A DNA stretch of 64,000 bases, taken from contig NW_020844672.1 of the NCBI RefSeq assembly GCF_003704095.1, forward strand, positions 620,001 through 684,000. Reading direction: 5' to 3'. The notes under the pieces are model-generated. The model had not been told where the DNA came from. It saw only the letters and a program-made list of their open reading frames with translations, and searched no databases. Position 1 is the first letter of the stretch. Each line of letters begins with the position of its first letter. A program made the translations under genes and the position numbers. Source of the stretch: Pocillopora damicornis (Eukaryota). Positions 10,698 through 44,957 of this stretch are shown piece by piece.

Positions 10698-13600
10698 TCA
10701 CAAAAAACTACAGAATCCCTTCTGTTCTACTCTTCCATTGTAGTTTCCAGAATCTCCTGCTCCAGATTTTCGGTCATTATACTGAAAAGAGACAAAAGTG
10801 AAGCTAAAAATAATTAAAAACATCATAATATTAAAAAAGAATAACAATAAAATAAACATTAAATTAATACATAAAAACGTATAAAGAGAAAAATAAACAC
10901 AAATAAACAAATAAATAAATAAAAGCATATTTGTCCCAATAATTTAATTGTTTGTAGACACGTAACCATGGACCTCTACCTCAGTGGAAGAGCATCTGAA
11001 GTACCAATCAGAAAGTCGTTGGGTCAAGACCTAATGGAAGCACTCTAAGTTTTTTTTCCGAATATACATAAGTCACTCTATGAATAACATCATCTTTCAC
11101 CAAACTAACCAGGCTTAAAATTTACCATCTTCATTTACATCATTCAAAATTGCTTATTCTCTTATATCAAGAAAACACACCAGGTTCAAGAGAATTTTCC
11201 TGAGGCATGATACTTGCAAGGTTTGAGTACAAAATAACGATTAACTTCAGTGGAGGACTATTGAAGGCTGCTAAATCAGCTAAACTCTGGATTCTGGACA
11301 CTACTCAGGTGTCATTTCAGTCATTAATATTATAACGCTTGTACCTGGAGACACATTTGGTCGGGGTTTTCTTTAAGGTTTTAAGTAGCCGGAGCTTTTT
11401 AAAGGTAAACGGTTGTGGGTCTCGAAATCCAATATGGCGGACAAAACGTCATATCGTTCGTATTCCTGCCACCGTAGCAAGATTTGTCAAAAAGACAGTC
11501 CCCATCAGAACGTTTTTAAACTAAACTTGAGTCAGAAGTCTTTTTATGTTTTCAGAAAAGATAGGCAGTGCAAATTTATATTTTTATTGAGCACAAGTTT
11601 AGACCTGATAAACATCATCTCTGTACGGGTTCTCGAAGCAATGAAAGTAGCCGGCGAAACCTTGTGGAGAAGCCGGCGTCCTTCGCCGGCTGCCGGCTCT
11701 TATCTACAACCCTGTTGGTACAGTGTCTATGAGCTCCCTAGGTTGGAAAACACTAAATATCCTTAACTATGCCTGAATTTTAGAGGGGCACAAGGAAGAA
11801 CTCCAATCAAACAGGTTTATCTCAGTGCAGTCGTGATGGAAGAAAGTGGTCTCACTGTGTAATACTGAATTCAAAGGCCAAAAAAAAAAAAAATAAAAAA
11901 AAAATGAAGACTTCTCTTCAAATTCACAGCTTACATCTATAGAAGAATTTAAGAAAGCCTTTACTTTCAGTTGGAAATCCTCAATCTTAAAATTGTACTT
12001 TGCACTTAGTTTGGGCTCTGGAGTGCAATTTTTTTACATGCCATGTTCATGGCTTTGCCTACTAGCAAGTCTAACAACATGCAAATTATGAAAACTGCAA
12101 AACTTTATGCATGCAGCATATTATAAACTTTGAAGTGTACATAATGTATTCTTACCGTATTTGATCCTTCGTCTATACCTAAAATAATCTCTGTCATTCT
12201 TTGGAATATCTGGACAGGTAAAAAGTGAGTAACAGTCATGGAAGTCAAAGTTTACAAGAACTTTCAATAAAATAAACTTGTATTTTAAACAGAAATCCAC
12301 AATTTATGCCATATATCAAAGAGAAGTTAATTATATAATTAGGAGTTTGTGATTATCCAAAAAATCTGACAACTGAAACTAATTTTTTGGTGAATATAAA
12401 TTTACAAGATGAATGGGTATCATCTACCTCCTCTTTTGTCTTCTTTTTTTCCAAAGGTTTGTCCCCTTTGTTAAGGACACCTAGCCAGATGACTCATTTT
12501 TATTTAATTGATTATTGATTAGTTTAATAATTTCAGAATGGTCCTAGATACGAAGAGAGTTACAATGTTTGTCTGTTTGTCTATATTTCTACTGGTTTTG
12601 TAATCGGACCTTTCAGCGTCACCACGCGCATATAAAAGCGAGTTTAGTGTCTCTGTAATCAGTTCTTCATAAGTTTTTGAGTAGTATTTGTGAACTTTCG
12701 TCTTTTCGTTTCTTGAACCTTTGGCACAAGCAGGACCAATACATGTGTACCTTTGTCACTTTGTTTTTCTAAGTTTAGTTTTCCAGCATTGGGCGAAAGT
12801 ATACAAACAGATATTTTGTTGTTGTTTTGCCGTATTATCAATTGATTCGAGATTTAAAGGCCAAAATTGTATCAGATGCAAGTGAATGCGATGCAAGTGA
12901 ACGCCCACCATTTCGATAAGAACGATGGGCTGTTAACCTGCCACCAAATGTCTTGTAATTTTTGTACCGAAACTATTGTACTTATCGGAGTTTGTATTGG
13001 TTTACTTGTAGGGTCCATTATCATTTTAATATCGTTATCAGCGTTAAGGCCCAGTTTTTACACGCGATTTTTGATTGTGTATTTCGTAACATTTCATTAG
13101 ATTGATAGAGCTCTGATGTCCTATTGTTTCAGTCTACGACTGATTGATTGATTGATTGCGAGATTGATCGTGATTTTGATCGTTGATTGTGGTTCGTGGT
13201 CAATTACTTGCAAGATTAAAGATTCATATAAACGGTCAACCTTGGTCTGTTATTCTTCAATCTCAATCTGTAAAATAGCCCCCAAACACCTCGTTAACCG
13301 CGTCTTTGAGCGACACCCCTTGAAATCTTATGAATTAGATTTTTTTTCGTCACCGCAAGAGCGACACCCTCCAAGGACAATGAGATATAAACTAGCAGAT
13401 TTGGGCCTGATTGTCATTATCACCTTGAATTGTCGGTTAATAGTCATAAGAAGAAATTCTTGCAATGTTTCACCTGTCAGAACAAGTGTACCTTCCCATC
13501 ATCACCTGGGAACTTAACCCTTTAACCCCCAAGATCTGATTGTTAATTCTCTCCTCTAGCTGCTACACNNNNNNNNNNNNNNNNNNNNNNNNNNNNNNNN

Positions 13601-16600
13601 NNNNNNNNNNNNNNNNNNNNNNNNNNNNNNNNNNNNNNNNNNNNNNNNNNNNNNNNNNNNNNNNNNNNTTTGAAAATTTATTTTATCTGTCATGCTTAAA
13701 ATAAGGGAGAATGCTGCACTCAAGTTTTTCCTACCTCCTCTCCATGTTCTTTTGAAACTTTCCTTTTTTCCTCCATGTCAGTTTTATTTCCAACAAACAC
13801 AAAATTAACATTATCTTGTCTTGCATACTACAATAATGAACAGTGTTACTGTAATGAACAGTATTGAACATATATTGTATATAATGATCATAATAACAAA
13901 AACCACAACAATAATAATGAGATTTTCAATAAACATTCAGGTTTAACCTTGACACTTATTTGAACTGAAAAAATCCAATAAAGATGAATTTGATCTGCAG
14001 TAGTTATGATCATGGTGCTTTTCATTTCCTCCCAGTCTCACTCAAACTGGCCACCAATCAGGGATGAGTTGTAAAATACCCACCATCAGGGGGTGGAACC
14101 CTGCCACATTTTTGTTGGGAAAGCACGATGAGCAAAACTAGCAAAACAACATACATGCAGTGTTGTGATTTCTCACAAATCAATTTTTCAAGAACATGCT
14201 CGCCAAAATGATATGTTTTAAGACTTATTTTCAATATCTACTTACCACTACATCCTCACAAATTGATTACAAACACACTGTAAATTGCTAATATTGCAAG
14301 GAGCTTGCTTGCAAACTGTACAGAGGACATCATTTGACACTTAGAAGGGAGTATAAGCTTAGCTTGGAGATTGTTAAGCCCCTTGCCACATTTAAATTCT
14401 CCCAGTATGTCAGCTGATCCTTACCTGTTCTACTGTTTTGACCCAGTGGTGAACATTCAAGAAGCTATCATAATTTGTAACATCAAACACTACAACCACA
14501 CCCTGTAAATGGACAAACAAACCAACTACTCAATTTAATATTTAAGCTTCTAGAAAATGTTGCAAACAATAACAAAAGTATACAAACAAACCAACAAAAC
14601 TCAAAGACTAGCTTTTTATCTTCATTACCTCAAAAGAAATATGTTTATTTGTTCTGAATTCAAGAAAATTAAAGTAAATGATCATTTTCTTTTACTACAC
14701 TGAACACAGATCTCATGCTACCATCATCCACTTCAGGGCAGTTCACAAATAAAGCAGTTGGTGACAATAAACAACTTTTTGATAACCTCTCAGTGACATG
14801 TGAGATCATCAAAGTTGGTAGATGAAAGAGGTTGTTACCTAGTAGCTTTTGATAAATCAGATTGTGTTCAAGTGGTTAAATTTCAGTCAGACATTGGCAC
14901 TGGATGATCACATTTTGCAAGCAACTGTGCATGTCACCCTTGGGTTCAAACCAGCCAAAAACAAGGTACTTTTCTGCTCTTGCAAAAATTGACTAAAATG
15001 GTAAATGCCATCTACAGCCTAGGCCATAGACACCTTTTTTGTTCCAGAGGTATCTGTTTAAACACTAGTCCTCAACAGTACATTATTGATGTCAACTGGT
15101 TCCTTTTTTTTAATCTCCTTTACCTGAACATCTTCTTGTACATATGCAGCTGTCACTGTCCTGAAGTGATCGTTACCAGGTGTGTCCCTAATGAACAAAG
15201 CAAAGAACAACATCAAAATCTTTTTTTTTTTTATACCACAATTGGCAGTAATGTTGCACTCTGTCACAGTGGTTGGAAATTTGTTGCAAACTCACTTGGC
15301 TATGATTTGTGAGTCCACAGCATTTTGACCACTGTGTAGACGAATATTGCTGTCGACGAGTGTACAAAACATTGAACCATGTGTCGGTATTTACCACAGT
15401 TCAGTGCACAAATGATAAAATAAATCACACAGTATCATCATCAAAACACCAAGACAAATGATAAAATAAATCAGACAATATCATCCTCAAAAGACCAAGG
15501 AGAAACAAGCTGTCCACCAGTGAAATTCATAATAAAAGTAAGAGTAATTATAATTGTGCCACATTTCAAAAATAAAAGAGATTTTTAACAAACAGTTTTT
15601 CTTTATTTGAATATTCCGATAAGCACAAGCACAAGCAGTTGATTGTAGACCTCCCTCTGTTGTGTGTTCATTTATTTTTCAAATAGCCCATCTACAAGTT
15701 GCAGTATGTCATGGCGACCGTATATACCTTTATCACACAGCGCCATCTTGGATTGTGTAGTGTGCCAAATCGAGGTTGGACTGGCAAAAGGTATAGGTTT
15801 TGTGTTACATTACAGTGTTTTGAGTGAAGATTACAAGCAAGCATGGCCCATGATCATTGCTGTGTTAATTTCTGTAGTAACGACAAAGGAAATAAAAGTG
15901 ATGAGAATTTGTCTTTCTTCAACTTTCTTTTGAACCATTTATTGAGATTGAATGGATTGCCGTAACAAGGCAAGATGAAGGGCCAGATTTCGAGGTAAGT
16001 AGGAGTCGTATTGTGACCAGTGAGCTGTTAGATGCATGCGTTATTAGTGATTGACTTTCCCTTTCAATTAAAGAATCAGCCAGCAATTTTTTATGACTAT
16101 TGAACCAGATTGAATTGACAAAGAATTGATTCTCTTCTACTTGCTGGTCTGCTAAATTTTTTACTCTTGCAATTTCTTTTGTTGGCGCTCTTTACCCTAC
16201 TTAGTCCATGCAAACTGCTATGTTTTAGACACTGCATGATGTGCATGATGAAAAAAGNNNNNNNNNNNNNNNNNNNNNNNNNNNNNNNNNNNNNNNNNNN
16301 NNNNNNNNNNNNNNNNNNNNNNNNNNNNNNNNNNNNNNNNNNNNNNNNNNNNNNNNNTGTAGACGTAAACGTTGAAAAAATACGTAAAATTTGTACAGTT
16401 TTACGCTTTTGAAATTAAGTTCCTTTTTTCCTACAGATGCGACATCTGGCTACCTCAAAAAATTTGTAATGATCATAGATGCTCATTGTGGCGCTAGTAT
16501 AACTTAAATATGACGCTAGGTAAAAGGTGGTTCTGATTTTGCACCGCAATTTTGGAGAGAGAAAGGTGAACACGCAACGTTTAAAAAATCCGACTTCCGT

Positions 16601-16950
16601 AAATTCATGAAAATAGAATTGAACTCTTACCATATTTGAAGTTCTACAACCCTTCTCCCAACGTTTACAACAGTATTCTTTGTTTCTCTTTCTGCGGGAG
16701 TAAAAAGGAATTTTCAGCATTTTTACAACCATCACTGACAAAACTGGCATTTTCATGAATATTGTAATCTGGGCAGACAAGAACACTACTGCGACGAAAA
16801 CTCAATCAGCATTCAATGCATCTCACCTCGAGTTTGTACATAGAGGGGATTGAAGCGTTCTCCTAGATAGGATGACAAAATCTTGGACTTTCCAACCCCA
16901 CTATCTCCAACCAATGCAATTTTGTGTTTCACTGTAGTTTTTGCGGGCAT
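10698..16950 (-). CDS. Atypical Rab-like small GTPase with CaaX end
   Basis: Exons 16950-16827 (MPAK..GDSGVGKS..YVQTR), 16691-16631 (..VELQIW), 15187-15124 (DTPGNDHFRTVTAAYVQEDVQ), 14502-14425 (GVVVVFDVTNYDSF), 13827-13735 (FVGNKTD), G5 exon not found (probably in gap 13569-13668), 12209-12156 (IFQRMTEII..), 10781-10698 (..KGFCSFL*). All GT-AG, phases consistent. Confidence 0.85.
11362..11714. mobile_element. Possible hAT-type MITE with 5-bp TSD
   Basis: Ends CGGGGTTTTCTTTAAG / revcomp CAGGGTTGTAGATAAG (11/16 match); TTGGT directly on both sides (11357-11361, 11715-11719). Confidence 0.4.
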
Positions 16951-17283
16951 CTTCAGCAGTTGTACACGCGTTTCTGACAAGTCTTTCGTTGGTTTTGATC
17001 GTGATTACTGCTTACTTGCGAGACACTGGAACTAGCATTTCACGATGGATTCTGGGATATTGGACTCTCGCAGTTACTGTTCAAGGTGAGGCGATAGAGG
17101 GAAATATCCCTTTAATTGATCATTTTGCAAATCTTAACTCCTCTTTCATTTATTTCTGCTTAATAAGTAAGATTTGATGATAGATTTATTCCATGAAGTA
17201 GCCATAACCTTCCAGAATCTTATTAGAATCGAATTATAGCAGGAATAATACTGGGAGATATTCGATAGTTTCTCTTGGAAAAT

Positions 17284-17291
17284 CCGGAAGT
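17284..17291 (+). promoter_or_regulatory. ETS-type motif CCGGAAGT between the two Rab genes
   Basis: Exact motif ~330 bp upstream of the minus-strand Rab ATG; function is inference. Confidence 0.35.
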
Positions 17292-18384
17292 TCCCATAAT
17301 GTTCCACACGTTCGGTCTGCTATGTTAATTACTTCTGTAGTTTTCTATTTTCCTGGTATTGGAATGTCACACTGTGCATAGACTGGTTTCATTCCTTGAT
17401 AAAGCTATGCTGCGATTAGCGCGTGACTTCATTCGGTCGCTTTGCATCCAATCGATCATCAAAATCAATATGCATAATACTCATGTTTGACTAGACTGTA
17501 ATGCAATATTGCTTAAACGTATCTGAATTATGCTCACCTTGTGATCCGTGCATATGGTATATTGATACATTGGTAAATCACGAGATTGACGAGTGACTTA
17601 ACTCACGTGATGTGCAAGACTGAAAGATAAGTACGTGATATTAACGATTTCCTGCACTGGTCTTTGTTCCACTCGAGGTTAATATCAGAATGTATGAGAT
17701 AATTATTTCATAAACCTCAGGAAATTAATTGGGAAGTAAGGCAAATTTTAGTTGGTTAATTGTGATTTATTTCATTGAATTGTGATCATATTCTTGGTGG
17801 AAGAGAAAAACCAACTCAGATTTGCTTGGCTCCTAGCTTGTGGCTATGTAGCTAGGTGGTAGTAATCCCCAAGTACTCTCTTGGAGGCATGAGGTTGAAT
17901 AATATCAGAACCTTATTTTTTTTCAGGTTTTGTTTCTGCAATTTCCTGAAGTGCAGTCACATGAAAGGATCATTTACCTACTGGTTTTTCATCCATTGGT
18001 AAAAATATCATTTATTTCATTTAATTTTGGATGACAATTCCATCTTTTCTTCATCACTTTTTGAAAAAGAATTTGAGAAAGTTGTCTTCATTAACTGTCT
18101 AGCAAAATCAATTTGTGTTCAGTGCTACATTGTACAATAACTGTTGTTTTGTTTTCACTTTCTTAACCAATTTAGTGATTTTTAAAGGAGAAGTTTAAGT
18201 GATCATTCCAATATTAGACAAAGGGAAAGGTGAGATAGTATTTATAAAGGGAAGACAGTTTTGCTGATAAAGTGGATGTATTTTTTTTTCATAGATCATG
18301 CTCCAAAGAGAGATTCTCAGTTTGTGCTGAATACCTGTTTAATAAGACATGAAGGATTTTGCAGCCGTAGATGTAACATGAATT

Positions 18385-21300
18385 ATGTCATTACGGGAAA
18401 AAGATTACGATGTTACTTACAAAATTTTAATCATTGGGGAGTCAGCTGTTGGGAAAACATCATTGATAAAATGCTATTCTAAACCAAACGAATCTTTCAG
18501 GGCAGCTCTTCTACCAACAATTGGTGAGTTGGTTCTGAGTTCATCTATTTCAGTCTGTAATTAATACATGTCATAACAAGTTTGGTGTGTGCGTTAGAAG
18601 GTCTTTGTAATAAGCTTTTATTTGTAAGGGGTATAGATGGCTTGAGTGAGTTGGATTTAACTTCTTAAGTTTAGTTTTTATGAAAGTATTGTGAAATAAT
18701 GACTTGGTTTTATAACAAGTGTGTTGAACAGAGTAATGCTATTTAAAAATTCAAATTAATACATAACTGCAATAAATAATTTATTATTATTTTTCAATAG
18801 GAATTGATTTTGTAACAGTGGTTACGAATGTGGATGGAGTCCGTGTTCGCTTGCAGATTTGGTTTGTAAACCTCACTTGTTGTTTTGAATTTAAGGATGG
18901 TATAATTTGTTGTTGGGCTGGTGATTAAATGTTAATCACTAAGGTTTTGCAAACATTTCCATTGTGATGGCAATAGATTGATTTACTTATATATGAGAGA
19001 AAAGAAAAAGAGAAGAAAAAATAGAATTAAGTGAATATTCATTACTCCTTCTTTGTGTGAATATTAATTGTTGTCCATCAGGGATACAGCGGGTCAAGAA
19101 AGATTTAGAACTCTGACTTCCATGCACTTTAGGGGTACAAAGGTGAGTTGAGTGCTTTCTAACAGAGGCTTTTGCAATGCTTGGGGAGAATTGTGACTAG
19201 TGAGGTGGTATATATAGACTATAGTGAGGTCTGTATATCATCATCACATTTTATCCAAATTTGCTTGTTCTAATCACATTTGAGACAGTTTTTTTTTTCA
19301 TATTGTACCCTGCATGATTGAATGTGCAAGAGTTGACAGAGACAGAAAATTGATTGCCCACTGTTCACATATTTTCATTGTGAAAATGTGTTAACAGCCA
19401 TGAAAGACAAGAATGTAAACCAAACTACCAATTATAATGAGAAATTTACCAAATGGTCATAAATTTTTCCAGCAAAGATAATAGCGAATTAGGGTTTCAT
19501 GAATGCTTCTATGCAATGGTATTTTCTGTTTTGAACACTGCACAAATTCAATATGATTCTAAAGGTGTTGATCTTAATAAAATGATAAGTTGTGATGAAA
19601 ATGAAATTCCATATTCTTTTTTGCCAGAAAGTGAGGCAATTTTAGTTGGTGATGTCCTGAGCTCTTATGGTTTGAGTGAAGACATGTCACTGATTAAGTT
19701 GTGATGTTAACATGTGAACATTTTACATCATGTACCTGGTTAATGTATGATTGCATACGTTTTGTTTTTTCAAAATTTACAGGGTATATTGTTAGTTTAT
19801 GACATTACAAATGCTCATTCATTTGATCAACTTCAGTACTGGATAAAGACAATGAATAAGGTATGTATGATTTTGTAATTGTATCAGACTGATGCTGTAT
19901 AGAATGTTAATTTGGTCTTAAGATTTTAATTAACTGTATTTTTGATCCTTGATTTAAAAGCACAGAAAATTACTAGCACATGATTATTTTGATGTAGTTA
20001 AACCCTTTAATTCTCAGAACTGATTAAGTAATAACTTACTGCATTCATGATTATCTTAAAAAGAATGTGACGAGAAGAGTAACAATTAAGATTATATCAG
20101 GTTGAAAGTGTTATATCATAATATAAATGACAATATAATAACTTGATAAGCACCAATTTACAAGGAAATGTATAGAATTAGAAGAGAATGTTCTACTCAT
20201 TTCATAGAAATTTATCTAGATTATGCACATTTTTTACATACCTATACATGTATATTTTTTAATTGTACAAGAATGAAAGGATATGGTCTAACATGGGCCG
20301 AACCGCACTATCTAACACGCTTAACAGGCAGAAATGATGTGTTTCCAAATTGCTATAAGTTACATTTTACATGAATTGTAAATGTTTGTTTTTAGCATAA
20401 CCTGATGTATGAAGAAGTAATACTTGTGGGGAACAAGTGTGATTATGACAGAAAAAGCTGGGAAGTGGACACTCAAACTGGAAAGGAGGTCAAACAACAT
20501 TGTTTTTTTGTTTTTAATTTTTTGATTGGCCAATTTTGAAAATACTATACAGCTACTTTACACAAAAGTTCCAACTTACCCAGGTGTACTCTATATGCAA
20601 GTCTTTGTAGTCAGATTGGCAGATGGGTATTCAGAGTGGATGTATGAAAGGTAGAAGATAGCATTCTGCTTCAGTAATATCAGCAAAAGGAAGAAGGACA
20701 TAGTCCTCTGGAGAAAAACAATCACAGAAACAACATCTTATCTAACATTAGTCGTGCTGTGTATGTGTTGAAATACATGTGCAGAGTATGCAAAATATCA
20801 AGAGAATTAAGCAGGATACAAGTGGTGTAGAACCCAAGGCTTTGGCAATAATCAGGGTCACCTCAAGTACCACCCAAATCATTCAAAAACTGCACATCCT
20901 TTATGGTAAAGTTTCTACATGTGTGATAATAAAAAATTTCCATGGCATCCTGAAGATAAGTTCAATAACCAGCCATTGTTTAGGAAATGAGTTGGTACTT
21001 CCTCCTCAAAGAAATGTTTGGAACAATGACCACACTCAAGATAATGGGGTAAATTGAGCCTTTCCTGAAGCAAGTGATATAAATTGCAATTTTTTTTGTG
21101 AACAGCTTGCAAGACAGTTTGGGTTGAAGTTCTTTGAAACAAGTGCAAAAACACAAAAGAATGTCCAAGAGGTGAACTAAAGCAGTTAATTTTATTTCTT
21201 CCTTATCACCAATCCGTTATGTTTTATTTCACAGCAAGGCTACATTTGTTTTTTTTTTCTACTGGAGAGTTATGAGTAGTATTCTTGTCAAGTTTGCTTT

Positions 21301-21787
21301 GTCTGCACATTTTCAGTCAATACTGTACAGTAATCAATGACAGATCTGTCTTAAATTAATCATTTTTTCTGATAATTTTACAATTGTCCAAGCATGTAGG
21401 TGATGACAATGTATCCTACTTATACTCTGTGTCTAGTTTTGTATTTAATATTTAATGTTTACTTGTTATGTATCACTCTTTTCTTTTGATAGGTTTTCCA
21501 AGAACTTGCTAAAAACGTCAAGTATGCAAATGACCCAGTTATGGTAAGATTAAAAATTCACCAAAAGCATTTTCTTGAGTTCTTACTACCATTTTTCATT
21601 AAGTGTTAAAGTAAGCTCTGTGTCTATAATCATGTTACAATGAACAACAACTTTGTTTCTCTGAAAACTGTAGGTAATAAATGGTGATGAGGACGGTTGG
21701 GATAAAATAGATGCTGGGATAAGACTGCAATCATGTGATTACCCACAACACAAAAAAAAAATGGCCAACTGTGGTTGCACCAAATAA
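18385..21787 (+). CDS. Rab-family small GTPase (Rab8/10/13-like)
   Basis: Exons 18385-18523, 18801-18861, 19082-19142, 19783-19860, 20396-20488, 21106-21171, 21493-21543, 21674-21787. GESAVGKT, PTIGIDF, WDTAGQERFRTLT, GNKCD, ETSAK, C-terminal CGCTK*. Confidence 0.92.
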
Positions 21788-42626: not shown

Positions 42627-44957
42627 TCATTGTTTACAAAGGTCTGGGAAGCCAGCTTTCTCACACATGAGCTTCATCTCTGTTGTAACAGTGCTGAGGA
42701 AGACATGAGGATAGTGTTGATTCAGTTGTAGAACTGTCTTCTCATTGACTTGATCACATCTGACAAGTCCTAAAACAATCATGCAAACACAAAAATCAAC
42801 AATGTAAGTAATGTTGAACTCCCACACTGCCATTTAACAAACTACTCCTCACAACTGCAATGATAATATAAGGTAGCCTTCCTTCTTTACATCCCACATA
42901 CAGAGATCCTTATCGTTGCCTGACAGATATCAGTTTTGAAAATTATCCTATTGAATGACTTTATAAAGAAAAAATTAAAAAAAAAGCCCAAGTAACATAA
43001 TGGACAAGAGTGCATTAACTGTTTCTTGTTCCAACTGCTACATTGTCTCTTACAGACATTTGCAAGGCCATAATATACAAAATGCAGTCAACAAGTTTTC
43101 TCTTATAAAGACGGAACAATTATGCTTCAAAACAGGTTACCCTTTATAGCTTCAGAGTCTGTCAAACCCATGCAAAAAACATTTCTGGAAAATCTTGCCA
43201 AATACTCTTGATGTCCATCAACATGAGTCAAAACTTCAATGGCACTTGCAGACTTCTAGACTAAAGAGGAAACTTTACCAGGCATTGGTAGTGTTACACA
43301 CCTAAATGTTTAAGGTGAGGACATCCTTTTAAGACAGTTTTGACTCCTTCATCTGTAATCTTTTTGCACCAACTTATGTCCAATCTCTCCAGGTTACAAG
43401 TGTGATAAGTGAAGGCCTTCAATCCTAAATGATAGAATTACAAACAAGCTTGGTGAATAATTGATGTGACCAAATAGTTACTATGGCAGGATACATCCTG
43501 GGTCTGAAGGTTTGTCATTCCTGTGTGGTCTTCCCTTTTGAAGTCTCACTGCGAAAAATGTGTTTCTTTGAAACTGTCACATCACGTACAATGTTACAGC
43601 TGTACTTATTTAAAACATGAAACTTAATATGTAATTTCAAACAAGTGTCAGGGATTACATTTTCATCTACAAAATTTGTCAATTATTTGTTACTGCTATT
43701 TCTCCTTACAATATCACCCCTAAATTACGTATTAAGGTTACAAGAATAAATTAAATGATCACCAAGTTAAGATGCTCTTGATTGTTGAACAAATTCTCCT
43801 TTTCAGTGCTAAGGAAATGTATAGTAAATGGTATGGAGAATATGCATACTGATGTTAGGGTGTAAAGGGTTAAACTACTCACCATCATCAGTAATTTCAC
43901 AGTGCACCAGGTACAATCCTCTTAAAGAAGCACAATTTGAAAGAATATACTCTAAAGATGAATCTGTCACATTAGTGCACAGACTTAAGTTTAGGACTTT
44001 AAGATATTTGCAACCAAACACTACTTCCTTCACCACATCATCAGTGAGACTTGAAAAACAACGGAGATCCAAAACAGACATATTCCTACAGTATTGTGAA
44101 ATGTGGAGTGCTGTCTTCGAAGTAATTGTACAGGAGTTAAGATGAAGTCTTTCAAGCAGTGGACATCTTTGCACAAGTTCACAGACCCCAGCATCTTCAC
44201 ATTTACTGTTGTACTCTACAGAAATGCTTTTAATTTTTGGACAATTTTGTGCAACTGCAAAAAGGCTTTCACAAGTAAGGGAGCGGCACTGGTCCATAGT
44301 GAGTTTCTCTAATTTGACACAACCTTGACAAAGCTGAAAAAATAAAAACAGTAATAACCGGAATGTAATAAAACTTTGAACTCCTAAAATTGCATTTAAC
44401 TGGGGTCAATGAACAAAGAGAAATAATTTGTGCGCAAAATGTGAAATTAAACTCACCTCTTTGACTCCACAGTCTGTCACACGACACAAGCTTATGTCCA
44501 AAAACTTAATGTTCTGACAACTCTGTCCAATTTCAGTGAGGCATTTATCAGTCACGGCCGAGCACCTTACAACAGATAGTTCGACTAAATACCGACACTG
44601 TTGCAGAGCCTTGATCAAACCCTCTTCAGAGATGTTAGCACATTCTGAAACATCTAAAACAGTAGCAGTCGATCCATAGTTTGTTAATCGAACAAGAACT
44701 TCATCGTCCACCTTTTGCCTTTTCGGGAGCTTCAGTATTCTCCAAAGGCTTGGATCAAGAGTTGAATTATACCAACGCTTACAAACACAAGAAGCTCGGC
44801 CCAAATCTTTCACATCTAAATAAGACATGATACTCAAGAGCACAACTTGAGGCAGGCTGTTCATATCCATTGGCGAGGCGTTCAGTCCTTGTCTCGTCTC
44901 CTTCTGACCACAGTTTGAAGAATTTAAGTTCAAGCCATTTTCCATATTTTTATGCAT
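42627..44957 (-). CDS. FBXL17: F-box/leucine-rich repeat protein, FBXL17-like
   Basis: Exons 44957-44457 (F-box LPQVVLLSIMSYL..VCKRW), 44333-43883, 43424-43302, 42769-42627. C-term LGLVRCDQVNEKTVLQLNQHYPHVFLSTV resembles vertebrate FBXL17. Confidence 0.7.

What the first reader, a model, noticed from the sequence alone, without database searches (positions are those of the whole stretch)
10698..16950. Hidden atypical Rab with rewritten switch regions and no catalytic glutamine
Seen: seven clean in-phase exons spell a Rab-fold protein with G1 GDSGVGKS, G2 Thr, G3 DxxG, G4 NKTD and terminal CSFL. The effector motif TIGIDF is replaced by charged TRERET, WDTAGQE becomes WDTPGND, and YYRGA becomes YVQED with one extra codon. 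Known: the G3 Gln drives GTP hydrolysis; the switch I Phe is part of the F/W/Y triad used by Rab effectors; RabF motifs contact REP/GDI; CaaX ending in Leu suits GGTase-I. Inference: a hydrolysis-poor, membrane-anchored Rab derivative that may bypass REP/GDI and bind new partners. No stops and intact splice sites argue against a pseudogene.
Basis: partly seen in the sequence, partly recalled or inferred. Interest (0 to 1): 0.82.

Follow-up and report, generated by a model that had tools for sequence, protein, structure and literature searches.

The report
Divergent coral Rab without catalytic glutamine
This is a real, expressed coral gene for an unusual Rab-type GTPase whose switch regions are rewritten and whose GTP-splitting glutamine is gone; it is already in the databases under generic names, and it belongs to an unstudied family shared by stony corals and a sea anemone.

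Summary
Seven minus-strand exons (16950 to 10698) have GT-AG borders and are in phase. Pocillopora transcript contigs (96-100% identical) join them at exactly those borders. The transcripts carry 66 further bases between exons 5 and 6 that are absent from the window. The G5 exon is therefore real and unassembled, and the gene has eight exons. The gap at 13569-13668 lies in that intron. The gap at 16258-16357 hides no exon.

The gene is not hidden. It is RefSeq XP_027039973.1, "ras-like GTP-binding protein RYL1" of Pocillopora damicornis. That model bridges the missing exon with intron sequence and so lacks G5.

Orthologues occur in Stylophora, Pocillopora, Desmophyllum, Oculina, Porites, Montipora and the anemone Exaiptasia. 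They share:
- switch I T(R/K)xRx(I/T)K;
- DTPG(N/D/S), or DTAGD in Exaiptasia;
- AAYx(R/Q)EDVQG with one extra residue;
- intact G1, G2, G4 and G5;
- a CaaL end.

The family is one long-branched clade inside the Rab1/8/35/Sec4 group. It sits beside a canonical Rab8-like paralogue in both corals and the anemone. dN/dS is about 0.3 between distant corals and 0.7 within Pocilloporidae.

Poor hydrolysis is plausible but untested. Escape from REP/GDI is speculation. I found no paper on the family. Verdict: a new variant of a known kind, of moderate interest.

The parts
16827..16950 (-). Coding exon 1: start codon, G1 GDSGVGKS, and switch I up to the invariant G2 Thr (YVQTR). The donor is in phase 1.
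   Evidence: Pfam Ras/Roc positions 1-31. The transcript alignment ends at 16827. Exon-1 ORFs 76-80% identical occur in other corals.
16951..17085 (-). 5' UTR of the atypical gene. Its outer end is not defined. The same stretch is joined in RNA contigs to the neighbour's first coding exon.
   Evidence: L015 reaches 17009. L009 and L014 reach 17085 and then jump to about 18288-18294. A plus-strand donor AAG|GTGAGG sits at 17085/17086.
16631..16691 (-). Exon 2 (61 nt): the rest of switch I (ERETKN in place of GIDFxx), strands beta2-beta3, and ELQIW (RabF2).
   Evidence: The neighbour's exon 2 has the same length and phase. Exon 2 is conserved in other corals as EREIK(H/N)ASVQVGKVPIDLQIW.
16258..16357 (.). 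Assembly gap inside intron 2. No exon is missing here.
   Evidence: The transcripts join exon 2 directly to exon 3.
15124..15187 (-). Exon 3 (64 nt): G3 and switch II, DTPGNDHFRTVTAAYVQEDVQ. It is one codon longer than the neighbour's 61-nt exon.
14425..14502 (-). Exon 4 (78 nt): GVVVVFDVT (RabF5-like) and helix alpha3.
   Evidence: (Pfam Ras 74-98).
13735..13827 (-). Exon 5 (93 nt): G4 GNKTD.
   Evidence: (Pfam Ras 102-129).
13569..13668 (.). Assembly gap in the intron that should hold the 66-nt G5 exon. Not filled.
   Evidence: 66 nt of the transcripts (L015 positions 480-545) lie between exon 5 and the next exon and have no match in the window. Orthologues carry D(A/T/V)SA(K/R) there.
12156..12209 (-). 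Exon listed as 6, really exon 7 (54 nt): helix alpha5, IFQRMTEIILG.
10698..10781 (-). Last coding exon: hypervariable tail, CaaX box CSFL and the stop codon.
9567..10697 (-). 3' UTR of about 1.1 kb, running up to the next assembly gap (9467-9566).
   Evidence: Transcript contigs align continuously from 10782 down to 9567-9584.
18385..21787 (+). Head-to-head neighbour: a canonical Rab8-like paralogue of 8 coding exons, with TIGIDF, WDTAGQE, ETSAK and the end CGCTK. Its intron phases and exon lengths match those of the atypical gene.
   Evidence: Transcripts. The best solved relative is Rab8A at 1e-48.

Best explanation
**Shown.** The locus is an intact, spliced, expressed, single-copy gene of a Pocillopora coral. 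It encodes a protein of about 207 residues from a discrete, long-branched Rab family. That family is present in both main lineages of stony corals and in the sea anemone Exaiptasia. The gene lies beside a canonical Rab8-like paralogue with the same intron plan. This fits an old tandem duplication followed by rapid divergence of one copy.

The residues that hold nucleotide and Mg2+ are kept: G1 GDSGVGKS, the G2 Thr, the Asp and Gly of DTxG, G4 NKxD and G5 SAK/SAR. The following are changed in every member:
- the catalytic Gln, now N, D or S;
- the RabF1 effector loop, IGIDF to (R/K)xRx(I/T);
- the start of switch II;
- RabF4, YYRGA to AYx(R/Q)ED plus one residue.

The C-terminus is always a single-Cys CaaL box.

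**Inferred.** The protein still binds GTP but hydrolyses it poorly on its own. It would then sit on a membrane mostly GTP-bound, through one geranylgeranyl group. It would be controlled more by its abundance, or by a dedicated partner, than by the usual Rab cycle. It would bind partners other than those of Rab8.
For: - **Exon model and phases:**
- **Pfam Ras on exons:**
- **Transcripts at the predicted junctions**, including a 66-nt G5 segment missing from the assembly.
- **Single copy in the own genome**, tested with exon 1 only at E<=0.001.
- **Orthologues and their names:**
- **Family-wide motifs**, with invariant G15 D16 S17 G20 K21 S22 T40 D63 T64 G66 N123 K124 D126 S153 A154 C204 L207.
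- **A discrete family:** members score at least 270 bits against the family profile. Ordinary single-domain Rab1, Sec4, Rab8 and Rab35 score 180 bits or less. A few longer proteins of 270-370 residues score 181-230 bits.
- **Clade support:** 100/99, with a stem of 2.19 changes per site, inside the Rab1/8/35/Sec4 group at 97/98.
- **Linkage to the Rab8-like paralogue:** head to head in the window, also in Stylophora RNA contigs, and in tandem in Exaiptasia. The AU test does not reject family plus neighbour as one clade (p = 0.40).
- **Selection:** dN/dS is 0.26-0.39 between distant corals, with Fisher p at most 1e-6 against neutrality.
- **Fold:** a GTPase fold whose best matches are Rab10, Rab8a, Rab3a and Sec4. 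By sequence the best solved relative is Sec4 at 8.5e-37.
- **The Gln position** varies among N, D and S, and the next three residues vary freely. This is expected if that position no longer has a catalytic role.
Against: - No biochemical evidence exists for GTP binding, for slow hydrolysis or for the type of prenylation.
- Small GTPases without the Gln can still be switched off by GAPs that supply a catalytic residue. Examples are RapGAP's Asn and the Gln finger of TBC GAPs (established knowledge, not tested here).
- Between Pocillopora and Stylophora dN/dS is 0.70 and not significantly below 1 (p = 0.18). It is 1.18 over the first 77 codons, against 0.26 for the neighbour over the same stretch. 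Constraint in this coral family is therefore weak, or selection is diversifying.
- The G5 exon of this very genome has not been seen.
- The AlphaFold model is of moderate confidence (pLDDT 67.7) and poor in both switches.
- The position inside the Rab1/8/35 group is unresolved. A sister relation to the neighbour is not shown; it is only not rejected.
Expression evidence comes from assembled RNA contigs of Pocillopora samples about 1.5% diverged from the window.
Confidence: 0.6

Rival explanations
1. It is a normally cycling Rab. The missing Gln is made up for by a dedicated GAP that supplies the catalytic residue in trans, or by the Asn, Asp or Ser now at that position. The protein would then switch on and off like other Rabs, but with its own GEF, GAP and effectors.
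For: All nucleotide-binding motifs and the G2 Thr are invariant. Switch regions that are conserved across the family (TRERxIK, CRTITAAY) suggest that they still read out a conformational change. Trans-acting catalytic residues are established for RapGAP and TBC GAPs (own knowledge).
Against: The residue at the Gln position is not fixed (N, D or S), and the three residues after it vary freely. That would be unusual for a site that positions water or docks a GAP finger. No candidate GAP was identified.
Confidence: 0.3
2. The copy in this genome is a decaying duplicate (a pseudogene, or a gene under relaxed constraint) that has lost its G5 exon. The clean exons reflect a recent loss of function.
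For: The G5 exon is absent from the assembled letters. Pocillopora-Stylophora dN/dS is 0.70 and not significantly below 1. The first 77 codons give 1.18.
Against: - All seven visible exons are open with intact GT-AG sites.
- An assembly gap sits in exactly the intron where the exon belongs.
- Pocillopora RNA contigs 96-100% identical to the window carry the full 207-codon frame with the extra 66 nt.
- P. verrucosa and P. meandrina have 207-residue models.
- The frame has stayed open from corals to an anemone, and dN/dS is about 0.3 at depth.
Confidence: 0.04
3. It is a pseudo-GTPase: a Rab-shaped scaffold that no longer binds nucleotide and acts only through protein contacts.
For: Both switch regions are heavily rewritten. 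AlphaFold is unsure of them (pLDDT below 50 at residues 30-42 and 70-73).
Against: G1 GDSGVGKS, T40, D63, G66, NKxD and SAK/SAR are invariant or nearly so over the whole family. Pseudo-GTPases typically lose these motifs.
Confidence: 0.05

Closest known systems
Rab8 / Rab10 / Rab13 / Sec4 (exocytic Rab group)
   Same: These are the closest solved relatives by sequence (Sec4 8.5e-37, Rab8A about 1e-29) and by fold (Rab10, Rab8a, Sec4). The maximum-likelihood position is next to Sec4 and RAB8. G1, G4, G5, RabF2 (LQIW) and RabF5 (VFDVT) are alike. A single-Cys CaaX end with Leu is also known for animal Rab8 (own knowledge).
   Different: - Only 30-38% identity, and a stem branch of 2.19 changes per site.
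- No catalytic Gln.
- DTPG instead of DTAG.
- RabF1 IGIDF replaced by charged (R/K)xRx(I/T).
- YYRGA replaced by AYx(R/Q)ED plus one residue.
- dN/dS about 0.3-0.7.
The adjacent canonical Rab8-like paralogue (window 18385-21787, + strand)
   Same: It has the same intron positions and phases, and exon lengths of 61/61, 78/78 and 93/93 nt. It is linked to the atypical gene in Pocillopora, Stylophora and Exaiptasia. A common clade is not rejected (AU p = 0.40).
   Different: It keeps TIGIDF, WDTAGQE and ETSAK and ends in CGCTK. It is about 35% identical to the atypical protein. Its dN/dS is 0.26, where the atypical gene has 1.18 over the same stretch.
GTPase-deficient atypical small GTPases: RhoH and Rnd proteins, Rab24, and the Rab-like Rsg1/CPLANE2
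   Same: These are Ras-superfamily switches without the catalytic Gln. The Rho examples are membrane-anchored by a CaaX box and are controlled mainly by expression. RhoH has DTAGND at G3 (own knowledge). Rsg1 is described as lacking the catalytic glutamine while still binding GTP (PMC9012472).
   Different: They are analogues, not relatives. RhoH and Rnd belong to the Rho family. Rab24 and Rsg1 are separate Rab or Rab-like lineages. None appeared among the top sequence or fold matches. None is known to share the TRERxIK / DTPG / AAYxREDVQG signature.
Yarrowia RYL1 / yeast Sec4 / Ypt2 / Rab-13 (the names given by automatic annotation)
   Same: Best-hit naming: XP_027039973.1 and XP_022797890.1 are called 'RYL1', the UniProt entry 'SEC4', the Exaiptasia protein 'Rab-13' and the Porites protein 'Ypt2'.
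   Different: These names imply orthology, which the tree and the motifs do not support. The family is a separate clade limited, as far as was searched, to stony corals and one sea anemone.

Membership tests
Ras superfamily G domain | G1 GxxxxGK[ST], G2 Thr, G3 DxxG and G4 NKxD in order on a Rossmann-like fold | tested here: met
   The window has GDSGVGKS, T40, DTPG and NKTD. Pfam Ras matches the exons. The orthologue scores 146 bits on PF00071. The fold has six strands and five helices.
Ras superfamily G domain | G5 SAK/SAx motif | tested here: inconclusive
   G5 is not visible in the window because its exon falls in the unassembled intron stretch. It is present as D(A/T/V)SA(K/R) in all full-length orthologues and in Pocillopora transcripts.
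Rab family (RabF criteria of Pereira-Leal and Seabra, cited from my own knowledge) | RabF1 IGVDF in switch I | tested here: not met
   It is replaced by RERET in the window and by (R/K)(E/D/K)Rx(I/T) across the family.
Rab family (RabF criteria) | RabF2 KLQIW | tested here: met
   ELQIW in the window. L59, Q60, I61 and W62 are invariant in the alignment of ten orthologues and are kept in the window.
Rab family (RabF criteria) | RabF3 RFrsiT | tested here: inconclusive
   The motif reads (F/C)RT(V/I/M)T. The Arg-Thr core is kept. The preceding Arg and Phe are lost or changed to Cys in most members.
Rab family (RabF criteria) | RabF4 YYRGA | tested here: not met
   AYVQED in the window and AYx(R/Q)E(D/E) in the family, with one extra residue.
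Rab family (RabF criteria) | RabF5 LVYDIT | tested here: met
   VVFDVT in the window and in all coral members; VVFDVC in Exaiptasia.
Rab family (by descent) | Nearest relatives by sequence, fold and tree are Rabs rather than Ras, Rho, Ran or Arf | tested here: met
   The top 60 solved sequences are all Rabs. The top Foldseek hits listed are all Rabs. The family nests in the Rab1/8/35/Sec4 group at 97/98 against Rab5 and Rab6.
Rab8/10/13/Sec4 subfamily | Supported clade with bona fide Rab8, Rab10, Rab13 or Sec4 | tested here: inconclusive
   The maximum-likelihood tree puts the family next to the Sec4 sequences with weak support (73/98 or lower).
Hydrolysis-competent small GTPase | Catalytic Gln after DxxG | tested here: not met
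   Asn in the window. The family has N, D or S, and no member has Gln.
GGTase-I substrate | C-terminal CaaX with X = Leu | tested here: met
   CSFL in the window. CNFL, CTVL, CTIL, CIFL and CILL in the orthologues. C204 and L207 are invariant. The enzyme that actually prenylates the protein cannot be tested here.

The most novel reading that the evidence does not exclude
A Rab8-derived switch, predating the split of stony corals and sea anemones, has left the ordinary Rab cycle. It would be permanently GTP-loaded, anchored by GGTase-I rather than by REP/RabGGTase, not extracted by GDI, and bound to a new set of partners through its charged switch I. Its fast evolution (dN/dS about 0.3 overall, and about 1.2 across the switch regions within Pocilloporidae) would reflect co-evolution with a changing partner such as a microbial or symbiont factor.
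Probability: 0.15. Interest if true: 0.65.

Novelty: new variant of a known kind. Interest (0 to 1): 0.42.

Why it matters
Rab GTPases mark membrane identity, and most animal Rab subfamilies are ancient and almost frozen in sequence. This one was found only in stony corals and one sea anemone. It has kept its nucleotide pocket while losing the catalytic Gln and rewriting the surfaces read by effectors, REP and GDI, and it has stayed linked to its canonical sister gene.

It is therefore a natural experiment in how a Rab can be turned into a constitutive or differently regulated membrane tag in the animals that build reefs. It is also cheap to test with recombinant protein.

There is a practical result too. 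The current RefSeq and GenBank models for this locus (XP_027039973.1 and pdam_00003941) are wrong around the assembly gap and lack G5. The automatic names (RYL1, SEC4, Rab-13, Ypt2) suggest orthologies that do not hold.

Tried and rejected
- **Reads.** No reads were laid on the window, and the junction evidence comes from assembled RNA contigs.
- **No joined search.** The joined (spliced) window protein was sent to no search tool. Searches used single exons by reference. Full-length work used database orthologues by id. Exons were joined only inside scripts, for local translation, alignment and dN/dS, with X or N placeholders for the unassembled exon.
- **Exon 1 alone in the word search** can only return short ORFs. 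It found three exon-1 ORFs from coral metagenomes.
- **Pfam on exon 3 and on the last exon** gave nothing. Exons 2 and 6 are under 20 residues and were not scanned.
- **Rsg1/CPLANE2, RABL2, RABL3, IFT27, Rab28 and RJL** were considered from memory as possible described homes and set aside. The motifs I recalled do not match, and none is among the best sequence or fold matches.
- **The look-up of encoding contigs for Montipora P0040** found no record.
- **Literature searches** by accession, by 'RYL1' plus coral, by 'SEC4' plus Stylophora and by cnidarian Rab terms found no paper on this family. Supplementary tables were not searched.
- **Rfam at gathering threshold** found nothing in the window.
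- **Complex prediction** was not used. No REP, GDI or GGTase sequences of corals were in hand, and adjacency alone gave no pair worth testing.
Full report
**1. What is in the sequence**

On the minus strand, seven open segments are bounded by AG acceptors and GT donors:

| Exon | Coordinates | Length (nt) |
|---|---|---|
| 1 | 16950-16827 | 124 |
| 2 | 16691-16631 | 61 |
| 3 | 15187-15124 | 64 |
| 4 | 14502-14425 | 78 |
| 5 | 13827-13735 | 93 |
| listed as 6 | 12209-12156 | 54 |
| last | 10781-10698 | 84 |

Their phases (0/1/2/0/0/0/0) join into one frame that ends at TGA at 10698. The frame reads MPAKTTVKHKIALVGDSGVGKS ... YVQTRERETKN ... ELQIWDTPGNDHFRTVTAAYVQEDVQG ... FVGNKTD ... and ends GFCSFL. 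Pfam's Ras model matches exons 1, 4 and 5 at colinear profile positions 1-31, 74-98 and 102-129. The piece that would cover profile positions of about 130-150 (G5) is missing.

**2. The gaps, tested first**

Three RNA-derived contigs from Logan assemblies of SRR5963020, SRR5963033 and SRR5963076 (L009, L014, L015) are 96-100% identical to the window. Each carries the whole reading frame without introns. They align to the window in blocks whose ends coincide with the predicted exon borders.

- Exon 2 is joined directly to exon 3, so the gap at 16258-16357 (intron 2) hides nothing.
- Between exon 5 and the next exon the contigs hold exactly 66 nt (L015 positions 480-545) with no match anywhere in the window. 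The intron there contains the gap at 13569-13668, and both flanking exons are phase 0.

The frame is therefore safe, and the assembled gene lacks one 22-codon exon. The gene has eight coding exons.

The contigs also define a 3' UTR of about 1.1 kb down to 9567, where the next gap begins, and a 5' UTR reaching at least 17009-17085.

**3. It is not hidden**

The genome has 234.35 Mb in 4,393 contigs. The protein databases hold XP_027039973.1, 'ras-like GTP-binding protein RYL1 [Pocillopora damicornis]' (P0036, 201 residues). It is identical to exons 1-5 and to the last two exons. In place of G5 it reads through intron sequence on both sides (...GEEVGK / LTSMTVTHFLPVQ IFQRM...). The GenBank model pdam_00003941 (P0044) is broken in another way. 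Both errors follow from the gap.

**4. Relatives**

Exon 1 by reference found exon-1 ORFs in coral metagenome contigs. These also hold a conserved exon 2, (E)REIK(H/N)ASVQVGKVPIDLQIW. In the exhaustive search, exon 1 found a full-length 207-residue protein (P0004) and the Exaiptasia protein P0027.

From these, the full-length orthologues are:
- Stylophora pistillata: XP_022797890.1, 'RYL1' / 'SEC4';
- Pocillopora verrucosa and P. meandrina: 207 residues;
- Desmophyllum pertusum;
- Oculina patagonica;
- Porites lutea, P. lobata and P. harrisoni: 'Rab-13-like', 'Ypt2';
- Montipora capricornis;
- the sea anemone Exaiptasia diaphana: XP_020916476.1, 'Rab-13';
- several unnamed transcript-derived sequences.

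Many come from 1-2 kb contigs that carry the uninterrupted frame, that is, from RNA.

A profile of ten members scores family members at 270-361 bits. Ordinary single-domain Rab1, Sec4, Rab8 and Rab35 proteins score 165-180 bits. A few longer proteins of 270-370 residues score 181-230 bits. No member from outside stony corals and Exaiptasia appeared. That search scored only the 8,000 candidates sharing most words, so absence elsewhere (for example in Nematostella) is not proven. In the window's own genome, exon 1 has only this one match at E<=0.001.

**5. The odd residues are the family's signature**

- G1 is GDSGVGKS.
- Switch I is YVQT(R/K)(E/D/K)Rx(I/T)K, with the G2 Thr invariant. The IGIDF of ordinary Rabs is replaced by charged residues. 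The triad Phe becomes Ile in most members and Thr in Pocillopora.
- G3 is WDTPG followed by N, D or S, never Q. Exaiptasia has WDTAGD, so the loss of Gln predates the Ala-to-Pro change.
- The next three residues vary freely.
- Then comes (C/F)RT(I/M/V)TAAYx(R/Q)E(D/E)VQG, with one more residue than YYRGAxG.
- VVFDVT, GNKxD and D(A/T/V)SA(K/R) follow.
- The end is always C-a-a-L.

The residues that bind nucleotide and Mg2+ are therefore conserved. The catalytic residue and the RabF1 and RabF4 surfaces are not.

**6. Place among GTPases**

- By sequence, the best solved relatives of the Stylophora orthologue are Sec4 (8.5e-37), Rab1, Rab35, Rab8, Rab3 and Rab10. All of the top 60 are Rabs.
- An AlphaFold model gives the usual six-strand, five-helix G domain (mean pLDDT 67.7). 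Confidence is below 50 in switch I (residues 30-42), in switch II (70-73) and in the tail.
- Foldseek's best matches are Rab10, Rab8a, Rab3a, Sec4 and Rab1.
- In a maximum-likelihood tree the family is one clade (100/99) on a stem of 2.19 changes per site. It lies inside the Rab1/8/35/Sec4 group (97/98 against Rab5-like and Rab6) and next to the Sec4 sequences, without reliable support.

**7. The neighbour**

A note of the scan (s1-773066) pointed to a head-to-head paralogue, and I checked it. On the plus strand, 18385-21787, eight coding exons spell a canonical Rab with TIGIDF, WDTAGQE, ETSAK and the end CGCTK. Its intron phases are the same as in the atypical gene, and the exon lengths are 61, 61, 78, 93, 66 and 51 nt against 61, 64, 78, 93, (66) and 54 nt. 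Its best solved relative is Rab8A (1e-48). The two proteins are about 35% identical.

RNA contigs L009 and L014, and the Stylophora contig L010, contain both genes back to back. In Exaiptasia the orthologue (L023 10001-12601) is followed on the same strand by a neighbour-like Rab at 15201-17615. The linkage therefore predates the split of stony corals and sea anemones.

An AU test does not reject a clade of family plus neighbour (p = 0.40). Tandem duplication followed by divergence of one copy is the simplest reading, but it is not proven.

**8. Selection** (Nei-Gojobori estimates)

| Comparison | dN/dS | Fisher p against neutrality |
|---|---|---|
| Distant coral pairs | 0.26-0.39 | at most 1e-6 (dS is near saturation) |
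| Pocillopora vs Stylophora, whole gene | 0.70 (dN 0.16, dS 0.23) | 0.18 |
| Pocillopora vs Stylophora, first 77 codons (P-loop and both switches) | 1.18 | not significant |
| Neighbour gene, same species pair, its first 76 codons (the corresponding stretch) | 0.26 | 0.003 |

The family is constrained, but far less than ordinary Rabs. In Pocilloporidae its switch regions change about as fast as silent sites. This does not make the gene a pseudogene, because the frame is intact in every species and is transcribed. It does leave open whether the cause is relaxed or diversifying selection.

**9. How it most likely works**

*Shown:* an expressed, conserved, membrane-targetable (CaaL) Rab-fold protein with an intact nucleotide pocket, no catalytic Gln, and new switch I and RabF4 surfaces.

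*Inferred from established knowledge of Ras-superfamily enzymology:* intrinsic hydrolysis should be slow, so the protein would be largely GTP-bound unless a GAP supplies the missing chemistry. The altered effector loop and hydrophobic triad imply partners other than those of Rab8. The CaaL box suits GGTase-I.

RabF2, RabF5 and the core of RabF3 remain. Rab8 itself carries a CaaX box ending in Leu (own knowledge), so that end may be inherited. The closest analogues in logic are RhoH and Rnd, Rab24, and the Rab-like Rsg1. Rsg1 'lacks the catalytic glutamine' yet binds GTP (PMC9012472). None of them is a relative.

**10. Novelty and verdict**

I found no paper that mentions these accessions or describes the family. 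The databases name it by best hit only. It is a new, lineage-restricted variant of a known kind: a Rab with a disabled catalytic site.

'Hidden' is wrong. The biochemical claims await simple assays. Interest is moderate.

**11. Limits**

- The species of the RNA samples is not known to me. They differ from the window by about 1.5% in the coding sequence.
- The G5 exon of this genome itself remains unseen.

Noticed in passing
window 16951-17085 and 17086-18294: RNA contigs from two Pocillopora runs and one Stylophora run join the first exon region of the atypical gene (down to 16827) to the neighbour's first coding exon. They skip about 17086-18294, a plus-strand GT...AG intron with donor AAG|GTGAGG at 17085/17086. 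The neighbour's non-coding first exon therefore seems to overlap, or abut, the 5' end of the atypical gene on the opposite strand. The two divergent genes would then share a very compact, overlapping promoter region.
   Followed up: partly
window 13726-13735 and 12210-12248 (RefSeq XP_027039973.1 = P0036; GenBank pdam_00003941 = P0044): Both public gene models for this locus are artefacts of the assembly gap. The RefSeq model replaces the G5 exon with read-through of intron sequence on either side. The GenBank model runs into intron 2 and stops after exon 5.
   Followed up: yes
window 18385-21787 (+): The canonical neighbour is itself a divergent Rab8-like protein. Its best solved match, Rab8A, scores only 169 bits, and its end branch in the tree is 2.04 changes per site. 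It has an unusual C-terminus, CGCTK, and a neighbour-like counterpart beside the atypical gene in Exaiptasia. It may be a second hexacorallian-specific Rab family.
   Followed up: partly
L023 10001-17615 (Exaiptasia diaphana LJWW01000092.1): In the sea anemone the two Rab genes lie in tandem on the same strand, not head to head as in Pocillopora and Stylophora. An inversion of one gene happened in one of the lineages.
   Followed up: partly
window 4022-4891 (+): An open frame of 290 residues matches the C-terminal half of the reverse-transcriptase model RVT_1 (E = 9.8e-14). It is probably a retroelement fragment.
   Followed up: no
window 44409-44957 (-): An open frame of 183 residues has an F-box (E = 3e-16) and the start of leucine-rich repeats. 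It is probably an exon of an F-box/LRR protein gene.
   Followed up: no
window 3264-3470: Another note of the scan flags a hammerhead ribozyme motif here. The Rfam scan of the whole window at gathering threshold found no family, hammerhead included.
   Followed up: partly
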